Counted from the stretch's first letter, positions 1 to 23,600 are shown. The stretch is DNA of 64,000 nucleotides from Heteronotia binoei (GCF_032191835.1 NC_083237.1:558001-622000), one strand, 5' to 3'. Notes: a model not told the origin generated them from the sequence alone. Translations and numbers: made by a program.

Positions 1-715
1 TGCCGCGCCTGCGAGCCTCTCCTCCTGCCCGCCGAGCACCACCAGCAGCCCTGAAGGAGCAGCCGCACCGGGGACCCCCCCCAACACAAAGGCCACAGGC
101 CTCCACCAGGTGGCCCTCAACCGCGTGGACTACGCCTGCCTTGAGCTGGGGGACCTCTGCCCCTCCTGCCCCCCAAGCACCACCAGCAGCCCTGAAGGAG
201 CAGCCGCACCGGGGACCCCCCCCCCCCAACACACAGGCCACAGGCCTCCACCAGGTGGCCCTCAACCACGTGGACTACGTCTGCCTTGAGCTGGGGGACC
301 TGACACGCCTGCGAGCCCCCCCTCCTGCCCCCCAAGCACCACCAGCAGCCCTGAAGGAGCAGCAGCACCGGGGACCCCCCCCCCAACACAAAGGCCACAG
401 GCCTCCACCAGGTGGCCCTCCACCACGTGGACTACGCCTGCCTTGAGCTGGGGGACCTCTGCCCCCCAAGCACCACCAGCAGCCCTGAAGGAGCAGCCGC
501 ACCGGGGACCCCCCCCCCAACACAAAGGCCACAGGTCGCCACCAGGCAGCCCCACGAGAGCTCCAGCAAGGACTGCCAGGTGGCCCTCAACCACGTGCGG
601 TACACCTGCCTCAAGCTGGGGAACCTCTGCCGCGCCTGCGAGCCCCCCCTCCTGCCCTCCGAGCACCAGCAGCAGCCCTGAAGGAGCAGCCGGACCGGGG
701 GACCCCCACACACAC
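1..715 (+). repeat. Tandem array of ~135-190 bp units derived from the MED11 terminal coding exon and its flank
   Basis: The unit caggtggccctcaacc(g/a)cgtggactacg...gagctgggggacct...caccagcagccctgaaggagcagc recurs about every 135-160 bp. It translates as QVALNRVDYACLELGDL, similar to the recalled MED11 C-terminus ([17 protein letters not shown]). The array starts before the window. Confidence 0.8.
535..681 (+). pseudogene. MED11: Diverged full-length copy of the MED11 last exon (VATRQPHESSSKDCQVALNHVRYTCLKLGNLCRACEPPLLPSEHQQQP*)
   Basis: Aligns to recalled human MED11 [40 protein letters not shown] with a 3-aa deletion. It is preceded by cag but has no polypyrimidine tract. MED11 is the expected syntenic neighbour of CXCL16. 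Bases 1-54 (CRACEPLLLPAEHHQQP*) are the end of another copy, possibly the functional exon. Confidence 0.6.
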
Positions 716-3700
716 ACACACACACACCTGGCCAGCTGCAGGCTTCATGGAGCTGCACCCCTGGCCAGCAGCCATGCCTTGCAAAGGCACCAGGGCGGAG
801 GAGGCATGCGGCTGGCTGTGCAGTTCTGGAGGCACTGCCCTGTGGAACCCCCCATGCGTTCTCTGCTGGGCAATGTGTGCAGCACAGCCTTAGCTGGGCA
901 GAGAGCATTCAAGAGAGGGAGCAGGCAGCAAGAGAACAAACTGGGTCTCCTCCAGGCAGAGCGGGGGAGGGCGCAGAAGGGAGCAGGATCAGCATGAGGG
1001 GGGCGGGGCTTTGCGCCCAGAGGGACCCCGGAGAATCTCCTCTTCCAAAGCTGCAGCAGCGTCTGCTTTCCGATCTCCTGGGCAAAATAAAACTCGTTTT
1101 TTCTTATAGAAAGAACTTTTTGATGCGGCACCTTCTTTTTCTTCATCTTTCCTTTAACGTATTACTCTGCACAGAGCAAACCGCAGATTTTTGTTTTTGA
1201 CTCAGGAAACGTGTCCATTCCCTGTTGAAGATGGGAAGACTGAAAGGCAGGAGGGACCTTAGAAAGGAAGGCCTGAACTTTGACCTCTTCCTTTCTTCAT
1301 GGGTCGGGTATCCTAGGAGGATTAAGAAACTTGTTTGGCAGCAGCTGACCAGCTGTACAGAATCAACAATAGACACAACCACACCCTACCAAAAAATTTA
1401 ATTAATAACTATAATCAAAATATAGTTCTGCAGAAGTGTCAACAATTCAAGTACAAAAGTAATAACATTTTAGTAAACAATAATTTACACAAAGGATTTA
1501 TACAAAATATTGCAATTGTGAAGTCATTCTTTCTTCGTGTAAGTATCCACGTAATATCAAAAGTCCAACTCAATAAAATCCAGGGTTCTCATAAATTTAA
1601 CATAATTTTTTCAGTTGAAGAGGACATTAGTTCTAAATTCTTCCACAACCCATTCATCCACCATCTGCCAGAGGCCTGGTAACATCCATTTAGAAAAGAT
1701 TCTTCCTCAAGATCCGGTGGTCTTAATTTTTGAGTTGCCTCAGATTTCCTGTTACAAAAGAGCATTTAAATGGAATCCAGCAATCTCTCAGTTCTTCATC
1801 ACCAATTTATATGTAAATATGGGTCGTCTTCAACTGAAAACAAAATTTATGTGGAATTTATGAGGACACTGAATGTGGGTACAATATGTGGCTGTTTTCT
1901 ATTGCATCTGCTCCAGAGGGACTTGAATGCTAGGGACTGGAGTGCCCCGTGTTGTATGCCATGCCCCACAGCTGTTCGATATTTCAGACAGATGCCAGAT
2001 GCTCTTCCCTTGCCCAGCCTCCAGTGGCCCCTCCCAGCAGACGCAATGGCAAGATGGGGCAGGGGGCTCTCCAAAGGCCTGTGGCAAAGGTGGGGGAGGA
2101 TTTGTGTCCTGGGCAAATAAACAAGATCTGAACAAGTGCATCATTCTTTTAAAATACATACATGCATAAAATTAGGGTAACAGAAAGAAAAAAGGGAAAT
2201 TGGGTCTAAAAATTAATTATATAAAAATATTCACATTGATCAACAACATTTGTGTTCTGTATCATACACTGTGCAAAAACAGAATATATTCCCTAATGCC
2301 TCGGGCTTCTCCGCTCCCTATTTACAATCTAGCATGATTGGGGGCAGGGGGGCATCATTCTTCCAGGCAAACGTGGCAGAGCCCATTTCCCTGAGCAAGG
2401 ATTGTGGGAGTGGTGTCAGATCACCTTCATGGAACTGAAACCCTTTGGGGTGGGAGAGGAGGAGAGGATTCTCTTCCCACGCACACGCCTGCAGCAACCA
2501 TGGGGGTGGGGTCCCTTTGCTTCCTCCCCACTCTGTTAAAACTGCTACTGCCTTTCTGGGCCAGGCCAGTCACCAAAGCAGCCTCCCTCCCCAGAGGATG
2601 AAGCTGCCCAGTGCCGGCCGGCCCGGTTGTTTCCCTGGCATGATACTCGGTGTGCCCACCAGTGGGAGCCACTGGGGAGCGGGAGGGGGACCTGAGGGGC
2701 TTCCCCTTGAGGTTGCATATGCCAAGAACTTCACAGAGGGAGCCGAATGGAGAGTCCCTACCCTCCCGACCATACAGTCGGAAGGGAGGGCACAGACCTG
2801 GGTTCGAATCCCTGCTTGTGGGGTGACCTTGGGCCAGCCCCTCTCTCAGCCTCACCTGCCTCGTGGGGCCCTTGAGAGGACAAAAGGGAGGCAAGGAGAA
2901 GGATGCACACCTGGCCTGCCCAGCTGGCACATGGCATGGTGGAAGGTTTCCCATTCACTGGGTGTCACCAGGCAGAGTTTGAAAGGACAGGCGGGAGTGG
3001 GGGGACACAGCCCCCCAGGATCCCCACCCCCTGCAGGCTGTGTCCAGCCTCCTCTGCCCCCACCCCTCAGGGGCTCTCTCCTGGGCAGGATGGAGACTGG
3101 AGGCGCCCCGACAGAGACAGGGTCCTCCCCCCGCAGGGGGGCAACACGGCATCATCTGGCGGGGGGGAAGGGGAGGTGGCAGGGCCAGAGTGGAGGGCTG
3201 GGGGGCCTTGAAGAGGGTGAGGAGGGCGCTGGCTGCCCCCCATGGCAGGACTGGGTGTCTGTGTGGGCAAGCCTGTAGCCAGGCTCCATGGGTCAGGCTC
3301 CCCCAGGGAAGCACTCGCCAGGCAGCCCAGACTTGTGGGGAAGGGAAATGGTTTCCCGCCCCCTCCCAGCCTTGTGACTCTGAGTCCCCCTTCCCCCCCC
3401 CGCCCCCACTTGTGCTGCCCAGCCAAGAAGTGAGGGGGGCCGGTCCAGCCAGGACCCCACAGGAAACCAGCCTGTGGAACTGAAAGCAGACGTGGCTTTC
3501 ACATCTCCTTCAAGGGGAATTCAGTAGCCGTGACAAAACCCGGCCTGTTTTTTACAACAGCAGAAGCTCTCAGCTTGTTCTGCACAAGCGCTGTGGATCC
3601 AGGGACAAGGCCGAAAGCCACAGCCAGGCAGGGATTCAGAGCCCCGCCTTGAATCAGGAGACCGGCTTGCCCCGCGCTGGGTGACCTTGAGCCAGTGGCA

Positions 3701-3925
3701 GTTCTCACAGAGGCCTACTGCAGGCAGGGGAGGGGAAGGGAAGGCGACTGTCAGCCATTTTGAGACGCCTTAGGAGTATAGAAAGAGGAGCCTGCGTTTC
3801 TACCCCGCCCTTCACTGGGAGTCTTCCAGGCTCCTTCCCCCGCCCCCTCCCCACACCATGCTCCCTCTAAGAAGACAGAGTTTCTTCCTGGGTTGCTCCT
3901 GAGAGAACTGTGGTCACCCAGCAGC

Positions 3926-4082
3926 CAGGGCTGGCTCTGCCGCTAGGTGAACTAGGTGACCGCCTAGGGCGCCAGCCTTCTGGGAGCTCTGAATTGGGGG
4001 CTTCCCATGTGACTCGGTGATGTTATCAGTGCAGGGGGGGGGGCACCAGAAGTTAGCCTAGCTTAGTCGAGGGCCGGCCCTG
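3926..4082. mobile_element. hAT-type MITE with terminal inverted repeats and an 8-bp target-site duplication
   Basis: Ends are CAGGGCTGGCTCT (3926) and AGGGCCGGCCCTG (ending 4082). Identical CCAGCAGC flanks lie at 3918-3925 and 4083-4090. An 8-bp TSD is characteristic of hAT elements. Confidence 0.85.
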
Positions 4083-4499
4083 CCAGCAGCTGCACGCGAA
4101 GGAGGCAAGGGGGATCAAACCCGGGTCTCCAGATTAGAGTCCACGCCCTTAAGCACTACACCAAACTGCAAAGGCCCAAGTGTAAGAGCCAGCCCCCGCC
4201 TCCCCGGGAGGAGCCCACCAGAGGCAAGGCAGGGACCCTGCGCAGAGTCCGGAGAAGGTTTTGCGGAGTCCTTTTGGACAGAGTCATGAAGCAGCAGAAC
4301 CACGAAGGCAGCCGGGCTCAGCCCGCAAAAGCTTTAGCCCAAATAAACACATCTGGTCAAGAAATGTGCAAGTGCCCTGTGAAACCCTGAGGCTGCTGAG
4401 CAGAGCAAAGGCAAAGAAGCACCTCTCCCATCCTGGGAGTCTGTCCAGCCCGGACAGCCCATTCGACCCCGAGAGTGAGGCAGCCCGCTTGCAGGGGCC

Positions 4500-7400
4500 T
4501 CAGAGGTGGCTCCAGGTGTTCTCGGCCGGCAGGCACACAGTCCCTTCCTCTGGGGAGAGAAAGGCAGGGCTTGGCGGAGGGACCCCCAGAGGCTGGGGGG
4601 GTGGGGAAGGGGGATTTCCCGGGGCTGCCATAGGCTGGGGAGGAGGGGAATGGGGGGATTTCCCGGGGCTCCCAAAGGCTGGGGGGAGGGGGGATTTCCC
4701 GGGGCTCCCGGAAGCGGGGAGGGGGGGCTTGCCTGCTCACCTTGCTGGCCCAGAGCAGTGTGGGGTCCGAGGCCCACGGGGCTCCGTCTGTGTCGCCTCC
4801 TCCTCCTCCTCCTCCAGCCGTAGGCCAGAGCGACAGAGCCGGCGACTGCAGCCACACAGAGGAGAGCGCTGATGCTGGGGGTCTTGGCGTCGGGGGCCAG
4901 AGGGGGGGCTGCCCTTTTCTCCTCCCAGGGGGCCTGGCTGGTTCCTCTTGCAGCGGCCTCTGCACAACAAGCACAGACATTGGGGGGGGGATCTTCGGAA
5001 GGGAAGCCCCTCTCCCCCCTCCCCCCCAGGGCTCTGCACTCACTCACCAGCACTGGGGTCCGGGGGGCTCCTAGTCACCTTGGGGGGCCCGGCCTCCTCC
5101 CGCTGGCCCTCTGCGGTGGCTGCTCCCTGCGGGGTCTCCTGGCCCTTGCCTGGGCCGGCTCCAGCTGCGGTGGGGGAGGCCGAGGTCGGACCTGCTGTGG
5201 GGGCAGCTGGGTGGGGCCCGCTGCTCCCCTCTGCCCCCTCTTCAGGGCGTCCTGCAGAGATGGGCCGGGAGAAGTGAAGGCAGTGCCCCCCTCCAGCTCC
5301 AGGAGAGAGGGGGGGGAGAGGAGGCATGGGGGCTGACTGCCCCTCCTCCTTTCTCCTCCCAGGGGGCCTGGCTGGTTCCTCTTGCAGCGGCCTCTGCACA
5401 ACAAGCACAGGCACTGGGGGGGGGGGATCTTCTGAAGGGAAGCTCCCCTCCCCCCTCCCCCCCAGGGCTCTGCACTCACTCACCAGCACTGGGGTCCGGG
5501 GGGCTCCTAGTCACCTTGGGGGGCCCGGCCTCCTCCCGCTGGCCCTCTGCGGTGGCTGCTCCCTGCGGGGTCTCCTGGCCCTTGCCTGGGCCGGCTCCAG
5601 CTGCAGTGGGGGAGGCCGAGGTCGGACCTGCTGTGGGGGCAGCTGGGTGGGGCCCGCTGCTCCCCTCTGCCCCCTCTTCAGGGCGTCCTGCAGAGATGGG
5701 CCGGGAGAAGTGAAGGCAGTGCCCCCCTCCAGCTCCAGGAGAGAGGGGGGGGAGAGGAGGCATGGGGGCTGACTGCCCCTCCTCCTTTCTCCTCCCAGGG
5801 GGCCTGGCTGGTTCCTCTTGCAGCAGCCTCTGCACAACAAGCACAGGCACTGGGGGGGATCTTCTGAAGGGAAGCCCCCCTCCCCCCCAGGGCTCTGCAC
5901 TCACTCACCAGCACTGGAGTCCGGGGGGCTCCTGGTCACCTTGGGGGGCCCGGCCTCCTCCCGCTGGCCCTCTGCGGTGGCTGCTCCCTGCGGGGTCTCC
6001 TGGCCCTTGCCTGGGCCGGCTCCAGCTGCGGTGGGGGAGGCCGAGGTCGGACCTGCTGTGGGGGCAGCTGGGTGGGGCCCGCTGCTCCCCTCTGCCCCCT
6101 CTTCAGGGTGTCCTGCAGAGATGGGCCGGGAGAAGTGAAGGCAGTGTCCCCCTCCAGCTCCAGGAGAGAGGAGGGGGGTGAGAGGAGGCATGGGGGCTGA
6201 CTGCCCCTCCTCCTTTCTCCTCCCAGGGGGCCTGGCTGGTTCCTCTTGCAGCGGCCTCTGCACAAGCACAGGCATTGGGGGGGGATCTTCTGAAGGGAAG
6301 CCCCCTCCCCCCTCCCCCCCAGGGCTCTGCACTCACTCACCAGCACTGGGGTCCGGGGGGCTCCTAGTCACCTTGGGGGGCCCGGCCTCCTCCCGCTGGC
6401 CCTCTGCGGTGGCTGCTCCCTGCGGGGTCTCCTGGCCCTTGCCTGGGCTGGCTCCAGCTGCGGTGGGGGAGGCCGAGGTCGGACCTGCTGTGGGGGCAGC
6501 TGGGTGGGGCCCGCTGCTCCCCTCTGCCCCCTCTTCAGGGCGTCCTGCAGAGATGGGCCGGGAGAAGTGAAGGCAGTGCCCCCCTCCAGCTCCAGGAGAG
6601 AGGAGGGGGGGGAGAGGAGGCATGGGGCCTGACTGCCCCTCCTGGAAATGGCAGGCAGGCGTGGGGGGGGGGTTTAAGGTCTAGGAGCAACAGGGGGGCC
6701 AGTGGCCACAATCCAGACAGGAGGGGGCCCACAGTGTCAGGGGGTCTGTGCTGCCAAGGTTGAGCATGGGCACCCCCCCACCTCCCTCCCTCCCCTGCCC
6801 GCCCCCTCCCCCTGGGTGCCCTGCCCGCCTCCAAGCCAGAAGGGGGGGAGGGAGGGGGTCTTGTGGGGGGGGGCTCACCTTTCCGGCAGTGGGACTCCTC
6901 CAGCCGGACGACCCAGTCCTCCTCCCGCAAGCCGCAGACCCGTCTGTTGGGGAAGATGAACCTGCAGCGCAAGGAGGGCACGGAGGGGGTGTAAGGGGGG
7001 GAGGGCGGCAGCAGCAGGGCTCAGTGGGGGGGGGGCTGTCAAGTCTGCTGTAATTTCTATAAGATGCAACTTTGGTTCAGGAAAAGGATCCTGGGTAAAA
7101 ACCACACTGTATCCCGATGCTGCTAGCTTGAACTCTCCTCTTCCCCCTCCCTTCCCTTTGTTATGTAGCAATGCTTTGAAATGGGAATCTGAGAACAAGA
7201 TAGTAGAGCCTTCTCAGCAGAGCGTGGTGCCAGGAAGGTGCCCAAGGACGTCCAGGCCTGGGAACGAAATAGTAACATCAATGTGTGAATGTGCCCTGCA
7301 GAGAGTGCCCCTCCCTCAAGAATCCCTTTGATGTATACCTTACATGCTCGCTTTGATTGTATATCCGCCGGTCTTTCAATTTGATTCTCTAGTCCAGCAA

Positions 7401-7891
7401 CATGTTACAATAAACTAGAAACTTTTATCAAAAAGGCCTCGTTATTGAAACATCAGACTTGACAGGGGCGGCCACATACCTCGTGAAGTCCCGGCAGGTG
7501 TCGCAGGACTGCAGCTTGTCCAAGAAGGGCGGGGGGTCGTGGCGTCTTTGGCACAGGCAGCTCCCGGCGCCTCCTCCCTCGTTCCCCCGGCCTGCGGAAG
7601 GAGCACAGCGGCTGTGGCTGCCGGGGGGGGGGGGGGGGGGCGCCGGAGTGGGGCAGGCCCGAGGGGCCCTGGAGGCCACGCCCCCGCCCCCCCCCAGCCT
7701 CCGCGGTGGGAAAGGCGCGTCCCCCCTCCCCCCTTCGCCTGGGGCTGCTCCGCCCGGGGACGCTCTGCACATGCCCAGGGGCCTCTCCGCCAGCCCAGGC
7801 GCTCCCACCGCCCGCCCGCCTCACCTGGGCCCGGGAGGAGGAGGAGGAAGAGCGGGAGCCGGAGGCGGTGCCGGGGCGCCGTCGGGGCCAT
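4500..7891 (-). CDS. CXCL16: C-X-C motif chemokine 16 (membrane-anchored, mucin stalk); up to 448 aa if all four stalk exons are included
   Basis: Exons (minus strand): 7891-7825 signal peptide MAPTAPRHRLRLPLFLLLLPGP; 7591-7480 GRGNEGGGAGSCLCQRR...SCDTCRDFTR (recalled human GNEGSVTGSCYC); 6961-6879 FIFPNRRVCGLREEDWVVRLEESHCRK; stalk exons 6544-6341, 6112-5909, 5687-5484, 5251-5048; TM exon 4959-4741 (SISALLCVAAVAGSVALAYGWRRRRRRR); tail 4549-4500 (EEGTVCLPAENTWSHL*). All junctions are GT-AG and phase-compatible, and the position is syntenic. Confidence 0.9.
4905..6641 (-). repeat. Four-copy tandem duplication (425-436 bp period) spanning the CXCL16 stalk exon, intron 4 and the first ~45 nt of the TM exon
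   Basis: Stalk exon starts at 6544, 6112, 5687 and 5251. Copies differ by a few substitutions and by homopolymer lengths. Confidence 0.95.
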
Positions 7892-8010
7892 GGCAGGAGC
7901 CGGAGAGCTGGGCACGCAGCGGGGAAAGCGAAAGCGAAGGGTGACCCGCGCGGGGTTTTCCTGGGCAGGCTGGCAGCGCCGCTCCGCCCCCACCGCCCTC
8001 CCGGCCCGCT
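7540..8010 (-). promoter_or_regulatory. CpG-rich promoter and first-exon region of CXCL16
   Basis: Visibly CpG-dense GC-rich stretch around the CXCL16 ATG at 7891. Confidence 0.55.
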
Positions 8011-8118
8011 GGAGCTTAGCAAAAGAACGAAAGTTTACTAGAAAACATCAGGAGAGGGGAGAAAACAGAAAAACAGTCTAGCTTCGGTGCAGGTCCGTTC
8101 TGGAGTAGAGCTCAAGGG

Positions 8119-11566: not shown

Positions 11567-14500
11567 ATGGCCCCTCTGCTGCTCCTCCTCCTCCTCGCCC
11601 TCCTGGTCTTCGTCCCAGGGGCTGGGGCCTGGGCAAAAGGTACTGGGACTTGGGGGGGGGGACCTGTGCCCTTCCCCTGGCCACTTCCACCCCCCCCCCG
11701 GCATCTTCCCCTCCCTCCCTCTCTCTGGGGTGATCTCCCCTCCCTCCTCTGACCAGGATGCCCCAGGCTGACCCCCCCAAGGGACTCGGGGCTGGGGGTG
11801 TCTCTGGGCAGGGAGGGGGGCAGAGAGTTTCCTCACCAGGGCTCTGTTTCTCTCCTCCTCTTCAGCCTGCGGCTTTCGGCCAGAGTTTGACGGGCCCCTG
11901 GCATCGCCCATGTCCGGGGGCCGCATTGTGGGGGGCACCAAAGCCCACCCTGGAGAATGGCCGTGGCTGGTCAGCATCCAGACCCCCAAGTACCACTTCT
12001 GCGGGGGAGCCATTATTCACCCCTGGTGGGTGCTCTCGGCGGCTCACTGCTTTCAGGATGCCACCAGGTACTGTGCGGGGAGGAGATGACGGACCAGCCC
12101 CCCTCTAGAAGCCCAGCCCTGCACCCCTGTCCCTCCCAGGAGAAGGGGGGTGAGGCCTGGAAGCACGGGGGGGGGGGGGGGCTCCTCCTGGCATGGCTCA
12201 CGGGGGGGGGGTGGATCTTGAAGGGTGCCCAGGCAGGCAGAATCCACAAGCTTTGCTTTGGGCATAACTTTGGTTGCTTCCTTGGCAATAAGTTGTAGCA
12301 GCCCGCTGTGTTGGTCCCAGGCACAATCCACACACGAGAGGCAGGGAATACTTCTCCCCTACTACTCCCCCCCCTCAATCAAAATGACATGAAACAGAGT
12401 GCCAGCTGTCCAGCCCCCCCCCCTTCCCCAGGTCGCTGGAGGTCTCCCTTCTCTGTCTGGTGTTGGGAAGTGAGGCAGGAGCTGCAGTTGCACTGAGGGT
12501 GGGGGGCCTGAAGGAGCAGGGCCACAAGCCCCCTCCCCCCTTCCTTCTGCTCCCCTGCAGGCCAGGAAAATGCCCCCCCCCCGTCTCTGCTCAACAAGGA
12601 TACCCCCCTCGTTTTCTGCAGGGAGGCCCCAGCAACCACTAGGGTGGGCCCTCCCCTCCTCTCCCGGCTACTCCCATCAGCTGCGCAAACAGGATCCCCT
12701 GTTAGATTTGGGGGGGGGGGGGGCTGCCAGAGGGCTTCTGGGCTCCAACCTGGCTCCTCTACTGGGGGGGGGGGCACAGAGCCCTCTGGGCCTGCAGTGC
12801 CATGCAGGGTCCCTGCCCCCCTCCTGCTTCAGGCCCAGAAGGGACCCTGGAGAAAGGATCCGTCACCACTGCACAATACGGTGGGCTCCCCCCCCCCACC
12901 CCTCCGTGCTGCCCCACTGCAGGTCGGGAGTCTGAATAGGCGTGGGGGCTGTTGCCAGCGGAGCCTTCAAACGGCAAGGAAGACTGGTCTGTCCAGGCCT
13001 CAGGCCAAGCAAGGATGACATCGGGGGTGGGGGGAGTGAAAACCCACGGCCTTCTCCCCACACCCTCGACTTCTCCTAAGTGCCTCAGAGGGGCAGTCCA
13101 GTTAGTCCCTCTGCCTTGCCGGGTGCACAAGATGGAGTCCCACGATAAAAGCGTGGCTGAAACAAAATGGCTCCCAGCAGCCAGCTCCTCCTCCTACATG
13201 GCCAAGAAGCAGACACTCCCTCCCCCCTGCCCCCTCCCCTCGTGGGCCCTCCTTCCCTGCATTCTTCCCAGCAGCCCCCCTCCCCCCAGCCTGTGTCACT
13301 GGCTTTTCCAAGCCCCCCAGCTGTTTGGTGGCTCTTCAGTAAGTGAAGCCTGAACTCCTTCTCAGCATGCAGAAGCCAGAAGAAAGGTCTCTCGGGGCAT
13401 GTAAAGAGTGCAGGCCCAGTTCATGACGTTCTCATGTGGAATTCCAGGTGGGAGGCAGGCAGGCATTTATTAACGGGGGTCTCTGCCAGTCTCTTGGGTC
13501 TACTACTTCTCCTGGCAGAGAATGGGTGTTGTTATGAGCCCAGTTGGCCCTGGGATTAGCAAGAAGATTCCCGGCAAACCCACTTCCTGGCTTCCCATCC
13601 TGATGAGGAATTCTGCAGGACTCTGAAAGCCTGCACTATTTTGGCTGCTCTCCTCGGAGCTCTGCTTCTGACTGGCTTCGGCACAGGCCTCGCCCAGCTG
13701 CCAACAGCTCTTGGGGCCCCAGAGGCCTCTCTGCTGCCCAGCCCTGAACACCCAGCAGCGGTGGCTGCCTGTCTAGCACCCGAGGGACCTTCCCGTCGTC
13801 ATCCGCAGCCCCCACGCACCCTCTTCTCAAAGCCCTCTTTGGAGCGCTGCAAGCCTCCCGAACCTCCCCTCCTCTGCTTCCGACAAAGAGAGCTGTGTTT
13901 TGCGAAAGCTTCTGCTCCTGGACTCTTTCCTTTCTCCCTCCCCTCAGGAGCCACAGCCTGAAGGTGGCAGCCGGCAGCAACGTCCTGGGGCAGAACAACG
14001 TCACCCGCTGGGTGCGCCGCATCTTCTGCCACCCGCTCTACCACCCCAAGACCTACGACCACGACCTGGCCCTGCTCCTCCTCCAGGAGCCCCTCCCCTA
14101 CAGCATCTACCACAGCGCCATCTGCCTGCCCGACAGCAACACGGTCCCTGATGACGACATGTGGGAGAGCTGCTTCGTGGCCGGCTGGGGGCTCACCAAA
14201 GCCGGTGGGTGGGTGGGCAGGCGAGGGACCCAGCCTGCATTTGGGGGGTGCCCCAGGCCATGCTGGGAAATGCCCCCTCTCCCCCCCCCCCCGCTTCCTG
14301 GCTGGATTGGTGGCCTGGAACTCAAGAACTGGCGGCTTGGAACCCCCCCCCCCCAACTGGGATTGTCCCTCCCTGCTTCGGTGGGCACCTGCCGGACTGG
14401 TGCGTGGAGGATCCCTCTCACCCAACACCTACCTCCACTTGAGGGCGGGCGACCAGTTGCCCCAGAGGCTGGGTTGCCAACCTGTGAGTCTGGGATGACA

Positions 14501-17500
14501 AGTAATCTTCAGACTCCCCCCGCCCACCCTCCCTTTGGAGAGCAGATCCTGTGGCATCATTTCTCCACTAAGCTCTCCCCACCCCCAAAGTGAAATCCCC
14601 ATGAGGGCATGGAGGCCAAGGCCTTCCTGTGGATCCCTGCCCCCCTTATCTGCCCACTAACTCCCCTGCAGAGCCATCCATTCTGGCCCCCTGCCTGCCG
14701 CCACCCCACCCGTGAGTTACTCGCTGAGTAAAGGAGAGCTTGTTTTCTGAGCCCATTTCCCAACAACTTCGCTGGAAAGGAAGGAAAAGCTTCCGTCCAC
14801 TTCCTCCACCCCCATGCAGGATTTGCAAACCTCTGTCAGGGCCGCCCTTTCTTGATGGAGGCATCCTGGACTCTTCCGCCTTTCCTCTTTTTAAGACAAG
14901 GCAACTAGAACTGCACATGGGATTCCACGTGAGTCCACACTGTAGCCAGGCCTGGTCCCCTAGGCAAGGCTAGCTGCTGATGCCCCCCCTTCCACTGATA
15001 ACGTCTCCGAGTCACAGGGAGAGTGCCCAGAAGGCTGATGCCCTAGCCTAGGCAATCACCTCTGACTGGAGCACTGCTCAATAAACTAGGGGCCAGCATC
15101 CCCCCCTCACTTCCTGCCAGTCCAAACCTCCAGCAGCAGATAGGTAAAGTGGGGGGAGGGGTCTCCAATGCTCCCCACCCAAAGCTTCATCTGCCAGTTT
15201 GCCCACCCCCCGCCCAATGCCAAGAGTCCCTCCTGCAGCTCTTCCCAGCCTGCTTTGCTTTTCACCCCTGGGGGCCAGACTTGGTGGGGGGAGGGAGGGA
15301 GTCCTCACCTTTGCAGCGGGATGGCCCCTCCTGGCTGGGCCCGCTAGAGGGGCTGTGGCCTCCCCCCTGGGTCTGCAGTCCCCAAGTCCGCTGGCTGAGG
15401 CAGGGCCCCCCCTCTCTTCCAGGGACCAACCGGGCCTCCTACACCCTGCTGAAGGCCCAGGTGGGCATGGTGAACTGGCTGCTTTGCAAACGCTGGCTGC
15501 CTTCCCTGACCAGAAACATGGTGTGCGCCGGATTTGAGGAAGGGGGCCGGGACGCCTGCCAGGTAGGGGGGCACTCTCCGCCTTGCCCCCTCCGAGGGCA
15601 GCTCTGGGCCCAGAAGCCAAGGCTGGGGAGGTTGGGGGAGCTTGGGGGGGAGGGCGCTGAAAGGGCAAAGGGGGCATGGGGGGAGGAAATGGGGAGAGTG
15701 CAGGCGGGGGCGGGGGGAAGCTGGCTGGGAGAGCATTCCAGAGCCCGTTTGGACCAAACTGCATTCCTTTTGCTGCTTCTGCAAAGATGCCTTGGCTTCC
15801 TTAGTTGAACAAAGCGGGAGTCAAGTGCACCTTTAAGACCAACCAAGTTTTATTCAGAATGAAAGCTTTCGTGTGCTCTCTAAGCACACTTCATCAGACG
15901 AGGGGATCAGGCATCCTGGGCTGAAATACATGCAGTTTGTTGATTAAGAGGGCAAACCGGCTGTGATCACATGGTGAAGCTGTGGCGTGGCCATTTGGTC
16001 TGGATAGCCTTAAAAGGTAATAAAGTTCCCTGCCAGTTGGTGTTTCCGCAAATCTGGGTAAATCACAAAAGGACATGCATTTCCTAGCTGTAGTCCACCT
16101 AATTTACTTATCAACATCAATCTATACATTATAAACATCATTCTAATCTGCCATTAGGGCAGCCGTCCACACAACACTCTCCTCCCTCCCTCCTCCCGCT
16201 TCTGCGTTCTCTCGTGCTCTGTGCCCTTCTGGTGTGGGGGAGTTCTTGGAGGAAGGCTGCACATTCTCCCTCAGGAAGGGGAGGGGCTGTGTGGAGCCTT
16301 GCTGCCTGCGGCTGGAGCTGGAAAGTTTGCAGCAGCCTGGCCCCAGACCTGGGGGGGGGAGCTGCCTGCAGGGCCACTCCAGGCCAGAGAGGGCTGCGAT
16401 CCAGGCAGGCCGGACAGGCCCTGCTCCCAACCTCTTCCCCTCGCAGTGCAGTTTGCGCCACCTGGCCCAGCAGAAGAGTTGGTGGGAAAGGAAAGACCCC
16501 ACCCCCCTGGGCATTGGCGCCTGCAGCCTCCTCCAGAGGATGGGCATTCTGGCCTTGGAGCCTGGCAGGGCTGGATCTGGGAGGGGCAGAGGGGGTGCGC
16601 CAAATGGGGTATGGAGTCCATTGTGTTCTATGGGACCATAAGACAGAATGGCCCATAAAAGGTGTCATTTTTTAATTTCCTCCCCCTCAAAAAACAAGCC
16701 TGGCCCCGAGAGCCACCAGAGGAGCAGGCCAGGGACTTGTAAGGGAGGGGGCGGCTCAAGCAAATGCCATGCGGGGGGGGGGGCTTGCTGGGCAACTAGA
16801 GCTCCCCCCCCCTTCCCTGCTGCTTGCCACGTCCCCTCCCCACAGCCGCCAGCAGGGGTGGGGGTGGGGAGGGTTACTCGATTCAGGTTCAGAAACGCCT
16901 GGAGATTTGGGGGTGGAGCCTGGGGGGACACAGGGACCCCAGCAGTGGGGTGCAGGGCCACAGAGCACCCATTTGATCTCTGAAGTCTGGAGAGCAGCTG
17001 TAATCCTGGGGGCTCCCTGGTCAGCCAGTAAGCTGGAGGCTGTCGGTGAAAGAGGGGACAGGCTTGGCAGAAGACTTCCTTCCTTCCTTCCTTCCTTCCT
17101 GAAGATGTCTGCCTTTAGGATGTTGCCCTCACCCGCCCCTCCCTTTTCTCTCTTCCGGCTGCAGGGAGACAGTGGTGGACCACTCATGTGCCGCCCGCCC
17201 GGCACCGGCACCCCTCCAGCCTGGTACGAGGTCGGGGTGGTGAGCTGGGGCCGAGGCTGTGGAGAAGCCCGGAGCCCGGGGGTCTACACTCGTGTCTCCA
17301 ACTTCCAGTCCTGGCTGGAAACCACTTCGGCCCAGGCCGGCCGACCCTTCCAGGTGCCTCAGACCCCCCTGAGCCACGCCCCCATGCATGGAGCCCCCCA
17401 GCTCTTTGACCCATGGCCTGAGGGGGGCAGCTCCAGCCTGCGGGTCACCCTCAGCCTCCCCTGGTCTCTGGCAGGGGCCGGGCTGGTCCTCAGCTGGCTG

Positions 17501-17512
17501 GAGCTGCTATGA
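11567..17512 (+). CDS. Trypsin-like S1 serine protease (339 aa) with signal peptide and hydrophobic C-terminal tail; PRSS55/testisin/acrosin-like
   Basis: Exons 11567-11639, 11866-12067, 13948-14204, 15423-15562 and 17165-17512 are GT-AG and phase-consistent. Activation site GGR|IVGG; catalytic motifs LSAAHC, DHDLAL and GDSGGP; S1-pocket Asp in GRDACQ; C-terminal [19 protein letters not shown]. Confidence 0.92.
15800..16150 (-). mobile_element. Penelope-like element 3'/pLTR fragment carrying a minimal hammerhead motif
   Basis: The minus strand reads ctcgtCTGATGAagtgtgcttagagagcacacGAAAgctttcattctgaataaaacttggttggtcttaaaggtgc. This matches the recalled squamate PLE terminus. A second partial copy lies at 39453-39501 (+). 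The boundary away from the hammerhead is approximate. Confidence 0.65.
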
Positions 17513-20657: not shown

Positions 20658-23600
20658 ATGGAGTTTGTCACGGGCTACCGGGCAGAGATCCTGGACTTTG
20701 CAGAGCTGCTCTTTGGCTGGTATCGGCGCTTCCTGCTGGACTCGGCCGGCCGCGGGGGCAGCGAGAGGCGCAAGCGACAGGAAGCCTCCCTCCGGCGCCT
20801 GCCTCCGGATCCGGCCCTGTGGGTCTTGCACGTGCTGGCCAACCGCACCCTGGCCTTCACCATCCCCGACCCCGAGCAGCAGGTGGGGAGCCGCTTCTAC
20901 AGCGAGGAGGCGCTGGGCCTGAGGGATCTGGATCGCTTCATCACCTTCGTGAGCACCGGGGAGGAGGAGGAGGAAGAGGAGGCCGCACCCTCGGAGGCAG
21001 GTCAGTGATCCGGGGACGGAGGCTCCGCTCTCAACGTGCCCCACTGGAGGCACGCGCCCTGTGGCAGCCAACCTGTATGCACACCTGCCCCGTCCCTGCC
21101 TCTCTCCTCCCCCTGCAGCCCAGCCCCTCTGGCGCGTCGACCACCTCTTGCTCCTGACGGACGAGCACAGCACCATCCTGGGCTTCGACTTCTTGCTGGG
21201 GGGCCCATCGGGGGCCTCTGGGCGGGAGCCCCTAGAGGCCCGCGCTGTCGCTCTCCTCTGCCACAGCATGGCCTGCCCCCTGGGGGCTGGGGAGCCCCGC
21301 CGACCCAAGGCGCTCACTGTGGGAGACCCCGCCCTGCACAGGTGAGGAGGGAGCCCTGCTGGAGGGTGGGGAGCAGGGCAGAGCAAGAGCCCAGCTGGAG
21401 GCAGCTCTGAAGGCTTCTTGGGCTGAAACTGCAGGCCTGGTCCTATCCGCTGCTTTCTCTGCTCCAGAGAGGGGGGGCACAGTGCCTGCAACCTGCTGTT
21501 TTGGGGAGGGGCCCACCATTTCCCTTCCTCTCCCAAGCACCACCTTCCATGGCACAAACGCACAAAGGGCCTTTTGGGGGGCAGGAGACAAGGAGGGGTC
21601 GTTTTTTGCCTCCTGTTCATGCTCTCTCCCGTTTTGTGCATGAGCCCTGCTGGACCAGACCTGGGAGGGGCCATCGTGCCCAGCACCCTCCTCCCTCACA
21701 CGGTAGCCAATCCGTTCCTCTGGAGGGCCAATTGAAGCCGTGGCTTGATGGCCCTGGGATTCAGGGGCTGGCTGCCTCCCCACAGGGAGGTGCCCTGGAG
21801 ACCCTAAGCCCCTCTCTCTAAAGGCCATCTCTGCCTGGGGCACTTCAGCTCCTGGGTCATCGAGCCCCCTCACACGCCTGTCTTTGAGCTACTGGGGGCA
21901 CCGTTCAGACCAGCCAAGTTTAACTCTGGGTCTAGGCTTTTGTGAAAGTGAAAACGGGCCAGGGGCCGCTGCGGGGCTGGGGGCCGAAGCCCACCTTCTC
22001 CTTCCCCACCACGCGGGTGCTGAGCCTCAGGACAGGATGGGCCCCTCCTGGCCCTTTTCCTCCTCCTCTTGCAGGGCCCTGGAGCCGCAGCTCTCTCGGC
22101 TGGGAGTGAAAACGGGCCAGGGGCCGAAGCCCACCTTCACCTTCCCCACCACGCGCGTGCGAGCCTGCCACGTCTGCAAGCGGCACAGCTTCGAGGGCCA
22201 AGTCACCGCATGGTGAGCAGGTCCCTTTGGCCACAGGAGGGGCTGGCGCAGGGCTGGGCGAGTCTGGCACGGCCCGCTTTGCCCACCCACATGCCAGGGA
22301 GGAGCAGCCCTGAGATTTCGTGGGGCGTTCTTGCACTCCCGGGGCACGCTCTTTCTCGGGGGCCGACTTCCAGGGGGTGGCTGGAGCCCCCCAGGCAACA
22401 GAGAGCAGCTCCCCTGCAGAAAAGGGCCACTTTTGAAGGCCCCACCCAGGTCAGGCTCCACCCCCAAAGTCTCCAGGTATTTCCCCACCCAGAGCTGGCC
22501 CCCCTGCCTGCTCCCTCGCCTCAGCCTGGGGGGGCACAGAAGGGGGGTTGGGGAAGCCCAGACCGCTCCACCCCCACGTGCTTCTCTCTCTCTCTCCGGT
22601 GCCCCCCCCCCCGCAGCCAGCACTGCCAGGCCGTCCTCTACTGCTCCGAACGGTGCCGCAAGCTGGACTGGAGTCGCAGCCCTGAGGACATCGGCCACCA
22701 GTTCTGGTGCCAGCGCATGGCCAGGTATATGAGCCACGCCCCGGAGCTCGCCAACCTGCCCTTCACCTTCACCACAGGTGAGGAGTCCTGCCGGGCGCGG
22801 AAGAACCTGGCCTGGCTGCTGCAAGGGGGGCAGCCAGAGGGCCATGAATGAGACTGGGTGGGAAGCAGGGGGGGATGGGACTCACCTCTCCCTCTCCCCT
22901 CCCCTGTGCAGAGGTGACCAGTGAGAATTTCAACAAGGAAGGCTTCCTGTCTGCCCGGGGCCTGACCCGAGGATACTGGGCCGGGGAGAGCATGCTGGTC
23001 CGGGCGCCTGACTACGGCGTGGGGCTGCTGGGGGGCAGCAGTGGGGCTGAGGAGCCCCTGACCTTCCTGCACAGTGGTGAGAGGAGAGCGAATGGGGGAG
23101 GGCTTGGGAGAGCCCCCTCCTCAAGTAGGGCAGAGATGGAGCAAAGGACGGCTGCCGCTTCTGGGGGCTCATGCCCTCCCCAAAGGGCTCCACTCCACAG
23201 CCCCCCCCCCCCCGGCCCAGTCCCAGGGGCTGCTGCCTCTCCCAGGGCTCTCAAGAGCTGACCCGGCTCTTCTCACAGGGAACCCCTTTGAGGGCCTGCG
23301 GCCAGAAGGAGGGACAGCTCTGCCCCCCGCCCCCTCGGAGCCCCCAGCCCCACGGACCTTCTTCGGTGAGTCGGGCTGACAAGGAAGGGGGCAGTGGCTG
23401 CTGACGGGGGGAGGCAGCCCGGTCGCTGACCCCCCCGGCTCTCCCCCCCCTCCGCAACCACAGGCTCCTGGAAAGAATACTACCAGTGGCGGGGCCTGCC
23501 CCTGGGGGCCCCCCTGGCCGTCCTCCTCAGCTACCCCCTGACCGCCTACTACATCATCACCCAGCTGGCCCCCCAGCACTGTGAGTACCCCGGGAGGAGG

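What the first reader, a model, noticed from the sequence alone, without database searches (positions are those of the whole stretch)
4741..6961. CXCL16 stalk exon quadruplicated with built-in decoy acceptors: a possible splicing switch for stalk length and soluble versus membrane chemokine
Seen: four intact copies of a symmetric (phase 1-1) 204-nt exon encoding a 68-aa Pro/Ala/Thr/Gly-rich stalk, each with its own acceptor (catctctgcag|GA) and donor (CTG|GTGAGT). The duplicated unit also includes intron 4 and the first ~45 nt of the TM exon. As a result, a copy of the TM-exon acceptor lies ~85 nt downstream of each of the first three donors (6257, 5829, 5393). Splicing to a decoy reads EAAARGTSQAPWEEKGGGAV...HLCRTP* and stops before the TM helix, in the same frame in all three units. 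An AG at 6643-6642 gives the same stop from exon 3. Known: CXCL16 is normally membrane-tethered and released by ADAM10 shedding. Inference: this locus could encode membrane forms with 1-4 stalk repeats (up to 448 aa) as well as secreted forms or NMD targets, chosen purely by acceptor usage.
Basis: partly seen in the sequence, partly recalled or inferred. Interest (0 to 1): 0.8.

Follow-up and report, generated by a model that had tools for sequence, protein, structure and literature searches.

The report
Gecko CXCL16 stalk exon repeated fourfold
In this gecko genome a 436-base piece of the CXCL16 chemokine gene, holding the whole exon for the protein's stalk, is repeated four times in tandem; the repeat is real and specific to this lineage, but the only RNA available, from close relatives, shows the ordinary one-stalk membrane form, so the proposed splicing switch has no support yet.

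Summary
Every coordinate, frame and stop in the observation checks out. The unit is 436 bp, in 4.0 copies at 95% match (window 4916-6643, minus strand). Each unit holds about 97 nt of intron-3 tail, a 204-nt phase 1-1 stalk exon, a 79-90-nt intron and the first 44-46 nt of the TM exon.

The gene is the gecko CXCL16 orthologue. It aligns end to end with four gecko CXCL16 proteins that pass Pfam PF20902, and MED11, a trypsin-like gene and a MYND-finger gene flank it.

The array is lineage-specific. Sphaerodactylus townsendi and Gekko kuhli loci have one stalk exon, and all four gecko proteins are 200-244 aa. Units differ by 1.4-2.4%. Exon and non-exon parts vary equally, so nothing suggests selection.

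RNA contigs from three runs of two closely related organisms confirm all exon borders. They contain exactly one stalk exon joined to the true TM exon, with no listed stalk-to-stalk or decoy joint. No reads from the assembled animal itself were available.

Best reading: a young, passive intragenic tandem duplication whose decoy acceptors are by-products. The splicing switch is unsupported but not excluded.

Earlier scan notes describe two similar intron-exon tandem duplications (TAF6, STAT6) elsewhere in this genome, not this one.

The parts
7825..7891 (-). CXCL16 exon 1 coding part (start codon, signal peptide)
   Evidence: ATG at 7891, donor after 7825. RNA joint 7590/7824 (cut +1) in X1 and X3.
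7480..7591 (-). CXCL16 exon 2 (NEGG..GSCLC start of the chemokine domain)
   Evidence: Sole Pfam hit PF20902, E 0.053, for this exon alone. RNA joints on both sides. 50-68% identity to the chemokine domains of four gecko CXCL16 proteins.
6879..6961 (-). CXCL16 exon 3 (end of the chemokine domain, ends in phase 1)
   Evidence: Translation. RNA joints 6959/7478 in all three runs; 5250/6878 (X1, X3) and 6111/6878 (X2).
4916..6643 (-). Tandem array: 436-bp unit, 4.0 copies
   Evidence: TRF. Unit alignment. Own-genome search finds it only here. Units differ by 1.4-2.4%.
6341..6544 (-). Stalk exon copy 1 (204 nt, phase 1-1; private A at exon position 96, Gly to Ser)
5909..6112 (-). Stalk exon copy 2 (private variants at exon positions 4, 179 and 195)
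   Evidence: The RNA contig of organism B (X2) is laid here and shares all three private variants.
5484..5687 (-). Stalk exon copy 3 (one silent private variant, position 83)
5048..5251 (-). Stalk exon copy 4 (consensus type), the copy next to the true TM exon
   Evidence: RNA contigs of X1 and X3 are laid here, and X1 is joined to the TM exon by removal of the 88-nt intron.
6214..6257 (-). Decoy 1: copy of the first 44 nt of the TM exon with its acceptor, 83 nt after donor 1
5786..5829 (-). Decoy 2: same, 79 nt after donor 2
5350..5393 (-). Decoy 3: same, 90 nt after donor 3
6642..6643 (-). Cryptic AG in intron 3 at the left border of the array. It is the ancestral counterpart of the unit junction.
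   Evidence: No RNA joint was seen here.
4741..4959 (-). True TM exon (219 nt: juxtamembrane part, TM helix, poly-Arg)
   Evidence: Translation. RNA joints 4959/5048 and 4549/4741. 58-63% identity to gecko CXCL16 proteins.
4500..4549 (-). Last coding exon with stop codon. The 3' UTR continues to at least 4124.
   Evidence: Sequence. X1 contig covers 4124-4549.

Best explanation
This is the gecko orthologue of CXCL16, with six coding exons on the minus strand.

One illegitimate recombination joined position +44 to +46 of the TM exon to a site about 97 nt upstream of the stalk exon. Both sites carry an AGGAG...GGGCAG motif. Unequal crossing-over then amplified the resulting 436-bp unit to four copies.

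The array is young, specific to this lineage, and shows no sign of selection. The three decoy TM acceptors exist only because one border of the unit lies inside the TM exon.

Shown:
- The structure of the array.
- The identity of the gene.
- A single stalk exon in other geckos.
- A canonical one-stalk, TM-bearing mRNA in close relatives.

Inferred:
- In the assembled animal, functional CXCL16 comes from transcripts that reach the true TM exon. These could carry one stalk exon, as in the relatives, or up to four.
- Transcripts that use a decoy carry a premature stop more than 50 nt before later exon junctions. They are mainly substrates for nonsense-mediated decay, not a regulated source of soluble chemokine.
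- Soluble CXCL16 would still come from shedding, as in mammals.
For: Array and frames.

Gene identity:
- A phmmer search with the TM exon finds Gekko kuhli and Sphaerodactylus townsendi CXCL16. Both pass PF20902, at 34.1 and 38.7 bits against a cut-off of 27, and are named.
- Two more gecko CXCL16 proteins were found.
- The window's 244-aa one-stalk protein aligns end to end with them, E 1e-38 to 5e-47.
- MED11 lies just left of the window. A trypsin-like gene and a MYND-finger fragment lie to the right. This matches the gecko loci and the ZMYND15-CXCL16-MED11 order stated in preprint 10.1101/2024.09.20.614078.

Lineage specificity:
- L010 and L011 have one stalk exon of about 204 nt, an intron 4 of about 90-105 nt, and no such repeat.
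- The four gecko proteins are 200-244 aa.

No constraint:
- 5 of 204 exon sites vary against 9 of 215 non-exon sites, Fisher p 0.42.
- Of the 5 exon changes, 3 alter the protein and 2 are silent.

One origin: all three unit junctions are identical.

RNA: contigs of X1, X2 and X3 hold one stalk exon. In X1 and X2 it is joined to the true TM exon. No listed joint involves a decoy or two stalk copies.
Against: - The RNA comes from organisms that differ from the window by about 1-5%, not from the assembled animal. Whether they carry the array is unknown.
- Contigs collapse repeats and drop rare or degraded isoforms, so absence of multi-stalk or decoy forms is weak evidence.
- All four stalk exons have identical, good splice sites (pyrimidine fraction 0.80; donor GTGAGT). 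Exon definition would therefore predict inclusion of all of them.
- The decoy acceptors are nearly identical to the true one, so they should be used often.
- X1 has unexplained depth at 5388-5536.
- Copy 2 shares three variants with organism B. This hints that the array, or its parts, is older than a simple recent event.
Confidence: 0.53

Rival explanations
1. Longer-stalk protein. All four stalk exons are constitutively included and the decoys ignored, so the main product is a 448-aa membrane CXCL16 with a stalk four times as long.
For: The four exons have identical strong acceptors and donors. The stalk acceptor has a better pyrimidine tract (0.80) than the decoys (0.60-0.65). The 448-aa frame is open. 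An earlier scan note (s1-322578, unchecked) reports a duplicated STAT6 exon in this genome with both copies used.
Against: No stalk-to-stalk joint appears in any RNA contig, and the X1 contig runs unbroken from exon 3 through one stalk exon into the TM exon. The decoy introns (79-90 nt) copy an intron that is spliced efficiently in the relatives.
Confidence: 0.2
2. Hypomorphic or decaying allele. The decoys capture most transcripts, giving messages with premature stops, so the array mainly lowers CXCL16 output.
For: The decoy acceptors differ from the true TM acceptor at only a few intronic bases and sit at the native intron distance. Every decoy use ends in a stop. The only GT inside the decoy segment would give a 56-nt out-of-frame exon, so there is no rescue. 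No constraint on the copies is visible.
Against: CXCL16 is kept intact in five geckos. There is no direct RNA evidence of decoy use.
Confidence: 0.12
3. Regulated acceptor choice sets stalk length and selects membrane or secreted chemokine.
For: The needed sites exist in the same frame in all units. Mouse dendritic cells make secreted CXCL16 variants from inserts of 70 or 121 nt that carry a stop (van der Voort 2010, as summarised in PMC8036711).
Against: No such transcripts were seen. The decoys are automatic by-products of the unit border. The copies are 98.5-99.5% identical, show no constraint and are absent in other geckos. Decoy products would carry a 40-aa nonsense tail and be decay targets.
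Confidence: 0.07
4. Assembly artefact. The copy number is over-called, or two haplotypes were laid in tandem.
For: No DNA run was found to check it. Copy 2 looks like a different haplotype type. The sequence is G+C-rich with homopolymer runs.
Against: The four units each have private substitutions and indels. There is no gap nearby. The 1.7-kb array is easily spanned by long reads in an assembly of 661 contigs for 2.63 Gb. Short tandem arrays usually collapse rather than expand.
Confidence: 0.08

Closest known systems
CXCL16 (SR-PSOX), the transmembrane CXC chemokine of mammals and other tetrapods
   Same: Signal peptide, NEG..C-x-C chemokine domain matching PF20902 in the orthologues, mucin-like Pro/Ala/Ser/Thr stalk on its own exon, TM helix, short tail, MED11/ZMYND15 neighbourhood.
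   Different: The stalk exon is present four times in the genome. The tail has no tyrosine, so the YXPV motif described for the human protein (PMC8036711) is not there.
Intragenic tandem exon duplications (reviews PMC9013439, PMC8373072, PMC9741552)
   Same: Neighbouring homologous exons of the same length and phase, made by tandem duplication of an exon with its flanking intron.
   Different: Known functional cases are mostly ancient, diverged pairs spliced in a mutually exclusive way. Here there are four near-identical young copies. One unit border lies inside the next exon, so each unit also carries a working copy of that exon's acceptor.
Stalk or neck VNTRs of immune surface proteins, e.g. 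the CLEC4M (L-SIGN) neck-region repeat in exon 4 (PMC3261175, PMC11122574)
   Same: In-frame repetition of a spacer segment that could change how far the binding domain stands from the membrane. The copy number is probably unstable.
   Different: CLEC4M repeats lie inside one exon and need no splicing. Here each repeat is a separate exon with introns and decoys, so the repeat number in the protein depends on splicing.
Secreted CXCL16v1/v2 splice variants of mouse dendritic cells (van der Voort 2010, via PMC8036711)
   Same: Extra nucleotides that carry a stop codon would give a product without a TM anchor.
   Different: The mouse variants are observed and lack the stalk. The gecko decoy forms are only predicted, would keep 1-3 stalks and add a 40-aa nonsense tail.
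TAF6 intron plus exon-start tandem array in the same genome (earlier scan note s1-328419, unchecked)
   Same: The unit includes the start of the next exon, which makes repeated decoy acceptors. RNA there reportedly shows the whole array removed as intron.
   Different: The TAF6 unit holds no complete exon. The CXCL16 unit holds a full exon with both splice sites.

Membership tests
CXCL16 (Pfam PF20902) | Chemokine domain matches the PF20902 profile above the gathering score | tested here: inconclusive
   Exon 2 alone gives PF20902 as the only hit, at 14.3 bits, E 0.053, below the cut-off of 27. The spliced protein has no reference and was not submitted. A six-frame genome search with the profile did not pick up the short exons. 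The four gecko proteins it aligns with do pass.
CXCL16 (Pfam PF20902) | Orthology to annotated CXCL16 proteins over the full length | tested here: met
   The 244-aa one-stalk product aligns end to end with S. townsendi, G. kuhli, E. macularius and P. picta CXCL16. blastp E values are 1e-38 to 5e-47, and 2e-23 to 2e-30 for the chemokine domain alone.
CXCL16 (Pfam PF20902) | Architecture: signal peptide, C-x-C motif, mucin-like stalk, TM helix, cytoplasmic tail | tested here: met
   Translation of the exons shows a CLC motif, six cysteines, a stalk with 13 Pro, 13 Ala, 11 Gly and 12 Ser/Thr in 67 aa, a hydrophobic helix and a poly-Arg stop-transfer.
CXCL16 (Pfam PF20902) | Conserved neighbourhood (MED11 and ZMYND15 flanks) | tested here: met
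   The only PF10280 match in the genome lies 37-312 bp left of the window. A MYND-finger fragment sits at about 22.6 kb, E 5e-4, just under the cut-off. MED11 is also downstream in S. townsendi.
Mutually exclusive tandem duplicated exons | Exactly one exon of the cluster appears in each transcript | tested here: inconclusive
   RNA contigs hold one stalk exon. They come from relatives whose copy number is unknown.
Mutually exclusive tandem duplicated exons | Copies have diverged so that isoforms differ in function | tested here: not met
   The exon copies differ at only 5 of 204 sites in total, 1 to 4 per pair.
Coding VNTR of a stalk or neck region | Copy number varies between individuals or populations | not testable with these tools
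   No DNA runs were found. The one hint is that copy 2 shares its variants with organism B while the other copies match organism A.
Alternative-splice switch between membrane and secreted forms | Both isoform classes are observed in RNA | tested here: not met
   Only the TM-bearing form was seen, with no decoy joints. The test is weak: contigs, and relatives only.

The most novel reading that the evidence does not exclude
The array is a dynamic, possibly selected stalk-length module. Copy number and copy type would differ between lineages of this gecko complex, since the array mixes a type seen alone in organism B with a type seen alone in organism A. Acceptor competition inside each unit would tune both stalk length and the share of anchor-less or decay-targeted CXCL16.
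Probability: 0.07. Interest if true: 0.6.

Novelty: new member of a known kind. Interest (0 to 1): 0.3.

Why it matters
If the extra exons are used, this would be a natural experiment on how stalk length affects presentation and shedding of a membrane chemokine. It would also be a clean case of a duplication that brings its own competing splice acceptors. As the evidence stands, it is a well-documented young exon-plus-intron tandem duplication in an immune gene. It is useful as an annotation warning, because gene predictors could output forms of 244 to 448 aa or truncated forms. Together with the TAF6 and STAT6 notes, it is one more example of a recurrent type of small tandem duplication in this genome.

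Tried and rejected
- Pfam on single exons. Only exon 2 gave a weak CXCL16 hit; the stalk and exon 3 gave nothing, and the TM exon gave only a chance MerC hit.
- PF20902 six-frame search of the own genome. Four sub-threshold matches elsewhere, all with internal stops and none in the window. Uninformative, because the exons are too short.
- Word-based protein search with the open frame around the TM exon. No hit within 135-430 aa.
- Searches with P0004 and P0003. These found only other geckos, not the window's own annotated protein, so how the assembly's annotators modelled the gene is unknown. A 448-aa model would fall outside the length limits.
They were used only inside scripts.
- No DNA sequencing run holding the stretch was found, so copy number could not be checked against reads.
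- A MYND-finger regular expression over six frames found nothing, because the finger is split by an intron. Pfam on an ORF then found the fragment.
- In-frame rescue by a donor inside the decoy segment was considered and rejected. The only GT gives a 56-nt out-of-frame exon with a weak donor.
- The intactness of the four copies was considered as evidence of function and rejected. At 1-2 substitutions per copy, intact frames are expected by chance (inference).
- PMC3210559 (van der Voort 2010) is not held. It is cited only through the review.

Full report
**What is in the sequence**

On the minus strand, Tandem Repeats Finder reports one array at window 4916-6643: period 436, 4.0 copies, 95% matches.

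Exact pattern searches find the following:
- Four copies of the stalk acceptor, with exons starting at 6544, 6112, 5687 and 5251.
- Four copies of the donor, with exons ending at 6341, 5909, 5484 and 5048.
- Four copies of the TM-exon acceptor, with exon starts at 6257, 5829, 5393 and 4959.

Each stalk exon is 204 nt and open in only one frame. It enters and leaves in phase 1 and encodes 68 residues rich in Pro, Ala, Gly, Ser and Thr.

An alignment of the four units shows what one unit holds:
- about 97 nt of the tail of intron 3;
- the stalk exon;
- a short intron of 79-90 nt;
- the first 44-46 nt of the TM exon.

The three internal junctions are identical, so there was one founding event followed by amplification. 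Both founding breakpoints carry an AGGAG...GGGCAG motif, which suggests recombination or slippage at a short homology (read; inference).

- 244, 312, 380 and 448 aa for one to four stalks.
- 206, 273 and 341 aa, ending ...HLCRTP, if a decoy is used.
- The same stop from exon 3 through the AG at 6643-6642.

The only GT inside a decoy segment would make a 56-nt out-of-frame exon. Decoy use therefore always ends in a premature stop.

**Which gene it is**

Exon 2 alone gives Pfam PF20902 (CXCL16) as its only hit, below threshold.

A full HMMER scan of 1.84 billion representatives with the 72-aa TM exon found two real relatives. One is named C-X-C motif chemokine 16 of Sphaerodactylus townsendi (243 aa). 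The other is a partial protein of Gekko kuhli. Both pass PF20902. A further search added CXCL16 of Eublepharis macularius (244 aa) and Paroedura picta (200 aa).

The window's one-stalk product (244 aa) aligns with all four from the NEGG..GSC.C start to the C-terminus. Identity is 46-60% overall and 50-68% in the chemokine domain. E values are 1e-38 to 5e-47 for the full length and 2e-23 to 2e-30 for the domain.

The neighbourhood also fits:
- The only MED11 (PF10280) match in the genome lies just left of the window.
- A trypsin-like gene (11910 to about 17500, plus strand) and a MYND-finger fragment (about 22.6 kb) lie to the right.
- The two gecko loci show the same MED11 and trypsin neighbours.
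- A preprint states that ZMYND15 and MED11 flank CXCL16 in most mammals (10.1101/2024.09.20.614078).

**Comparison with other geckos**

In the genomic loci of S. townsendi (L010) and G. kuhli (L011), the protein maps to six coding exons (five in the partial G. kuhli protein, which lacks exon 1). There is a single stalk exon of about 204 nt and an intron 4 of about 90-105 nt. Neither locus has a comparable repeat.

All four gecko proteins have one-stalk lengths. The quadruplication is therefore specific to the window's lineage. The unit is found nowhere else in the 2.63-Gb assembly.

**Age and constraint**

Units differ by 1.4-2.4% in substitutions. Variable sites are as frequent in the exon (5 of 204) as outside it (9 of 215; Fisher p 0.42). 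All 17 indel columns lie outside the exon, mostly in homopolymer runs. Three of the five exon changes alter the protein.

At this divergence, intact frames in all copies are expected by chance. Intactness is therefore no evidence of function.

**RNA evidence**

Two run searches found only three RNA runs, all from one metatranscriptomic study and two coded organisms, kept as contigs. No DNA run was found. Laid on 3600-8050, they confirm every exon border with GT..AG joints.

- Run X1 (organism A): one 1064-nt contig runs 3' UTR, last exon, TM exon, 5048-5250, exon 3, exon 2, exon 1. It holds one stalk exon, and the 88-nt intron 4 is removed.
- Run X3 (organism A): shows the same exon 3 to 5250 joint.
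- Run X2 (organism B): a contig joins the TM exon (4959) to 5909-6111, with a 12-nt in-frame deletion, and then to exon 3.

No joint between two stalk copies and none at a decoy is listed. The X1 contig is not broken at either end of the stalk exon, which argues against an abundant alternative path there.

Limits of this evidence:
- The contigs differ from the window by about 1% in coding parts and 2.6-5.6% in the 3' UTR, so they come from close relatives, not from the assembled animal.
- Their genomic copy number is unknown.
- Contigs collapse repeats and lose rare or degraded isoforms.

**A detail that complicates the simple story**

The three private variants of copy 2 (exon positions 4, 179 and 195) are all present in the organism B contig. 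Its three mismatches to copy 2 lie at sites where all four copies agree. The organism A contigs match the consensus type, which copy 4 carries unchanged and copies 1 and 3 carry with one private change each. The Pro to Ser change at position 195 is derived relative to four other geckos.

The array therefore mixes two exon types that occur separately in relatives. There are two possible explanations:
- The array is older than their split and has since contracted in them.
- It arose by unequal crossing-over between divergent alleles.

Earlier scan notes name the genome as Heteronotia binoei, a species complex (not checked here). That would fit either route.

**How it most likely works**

The stalk acceptors have a better pyrimidine tract (0.80) than the decoy and true TM acceptors (0.60-0.65). 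However, the decoys sit at the native short-intron distance and differ from the true acceptor at only a few intronic bases. Sequence alone cannot predict the outcome.

My reading rests on three points: the lineage-specific, unconstrained nature of the array; the canonical mRNA in relatives; and the fact that the decoys follow mechanically from the unit border. I read it as a young passive duplication. Productive mRNAs are those that reach the true TM exon. Decoy-spliced RNAs are decay substrates. Soluble chemokine still comes from shedding, as known for mammals (PMC8036711).

**Comparison with what is known**

Tandem exon duplication is a well-described route of gene evolution (PMC9013439, PMC8373072, PMC9741552). 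Length-variable stalks and necks are known in immune receptors such as CLEC4M (PMC3261175). Secreted CXCL16 splice variants with stop-bearing inserts are known in mouse dendritic cells (via PMC8036711).

This case is a new instance of exon duplication. Its particular twist is that each unit also copies the next exon's acceptor.

**Verdict**

It is of modest interest unless RNA from the species itself shows use of the extra exons or decoys.

Noticed in passing
window 5388-5536: Run X1 shows mean contig depth 17.2 in this bin, which covers the intron-4 copy of unit 3 plus the end of stalk copy 3. No listed contig piece explains it, while the neighbouring bins are fully explained by the main mRNA contig. 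It may be a retained intron 4 of organism A laid on the most similar copy, or a second copy in that organism.
   Followed up: no
window 5909-6112 versus 5048-5251: The three private variants of stalk copy 2 are shared with the single stalk exon expressed in organism B. Copies 1, 3 and 4 match organism A's type. The array is therefore a mosaic of two exon types that occur separately in relatives.
   Followed up: partly
window 7591-7657: The organism B contig (X2) continues from exon 2 into intron 1 for about 67 nt, with an 8-nt deletion, instead of joining exon 1. This could be intron retention or an alternative first exon in that organism.
   Followed up: no
window 4786-4825: The AGG/AGA run encoding the poly-Arg stretch after the TM helix seems to differ in length in the relatives' contigs. 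There are 6 gap letters in X1 and X2, and the tool reports reads cut there.
   Followed up: no
window 3900-4200 and 7027-7473: Very high summed contig depth (up to about 5000), many 90-95% matches and many loose ends. These are probably interspersed repeats (SINE-like), in the 3' UTR/downstream region and in intron 2 of CXCL16.
   Followed up: no
window 4585-4709: A 44-bp tandem repeat (2.5-3 copies, 81-84% match) in the last intron of CXCL16.
   Followed up: no
window 11910-17509 (+): A trypsin-like serine protease gene (Pfam PF00089 on first and last exon fragments) lies between CXCL16 and the MYND-finger gene. The Gekko kuhli locus L011 has the same neighbour.
   Followed up: partly
window about 22618-22710 (+): A MYND zinc-finger fragment (PF01753, E 5e-4, 20.4 bits, cut-off 22.7).
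   Followed up: partly
L010:7257-7750: Intron 3 of Sphaerodactylus townsendi CXCL16 holds an unrelated 123-bp x 4 tandem repeat at 95% match.
   Followed up: no
G000:C15:557689-557964: The MED11 exon lies 37-312 bp left of the window's first base. The window therefore starts inside or next to MED11.
   Followed up: partly
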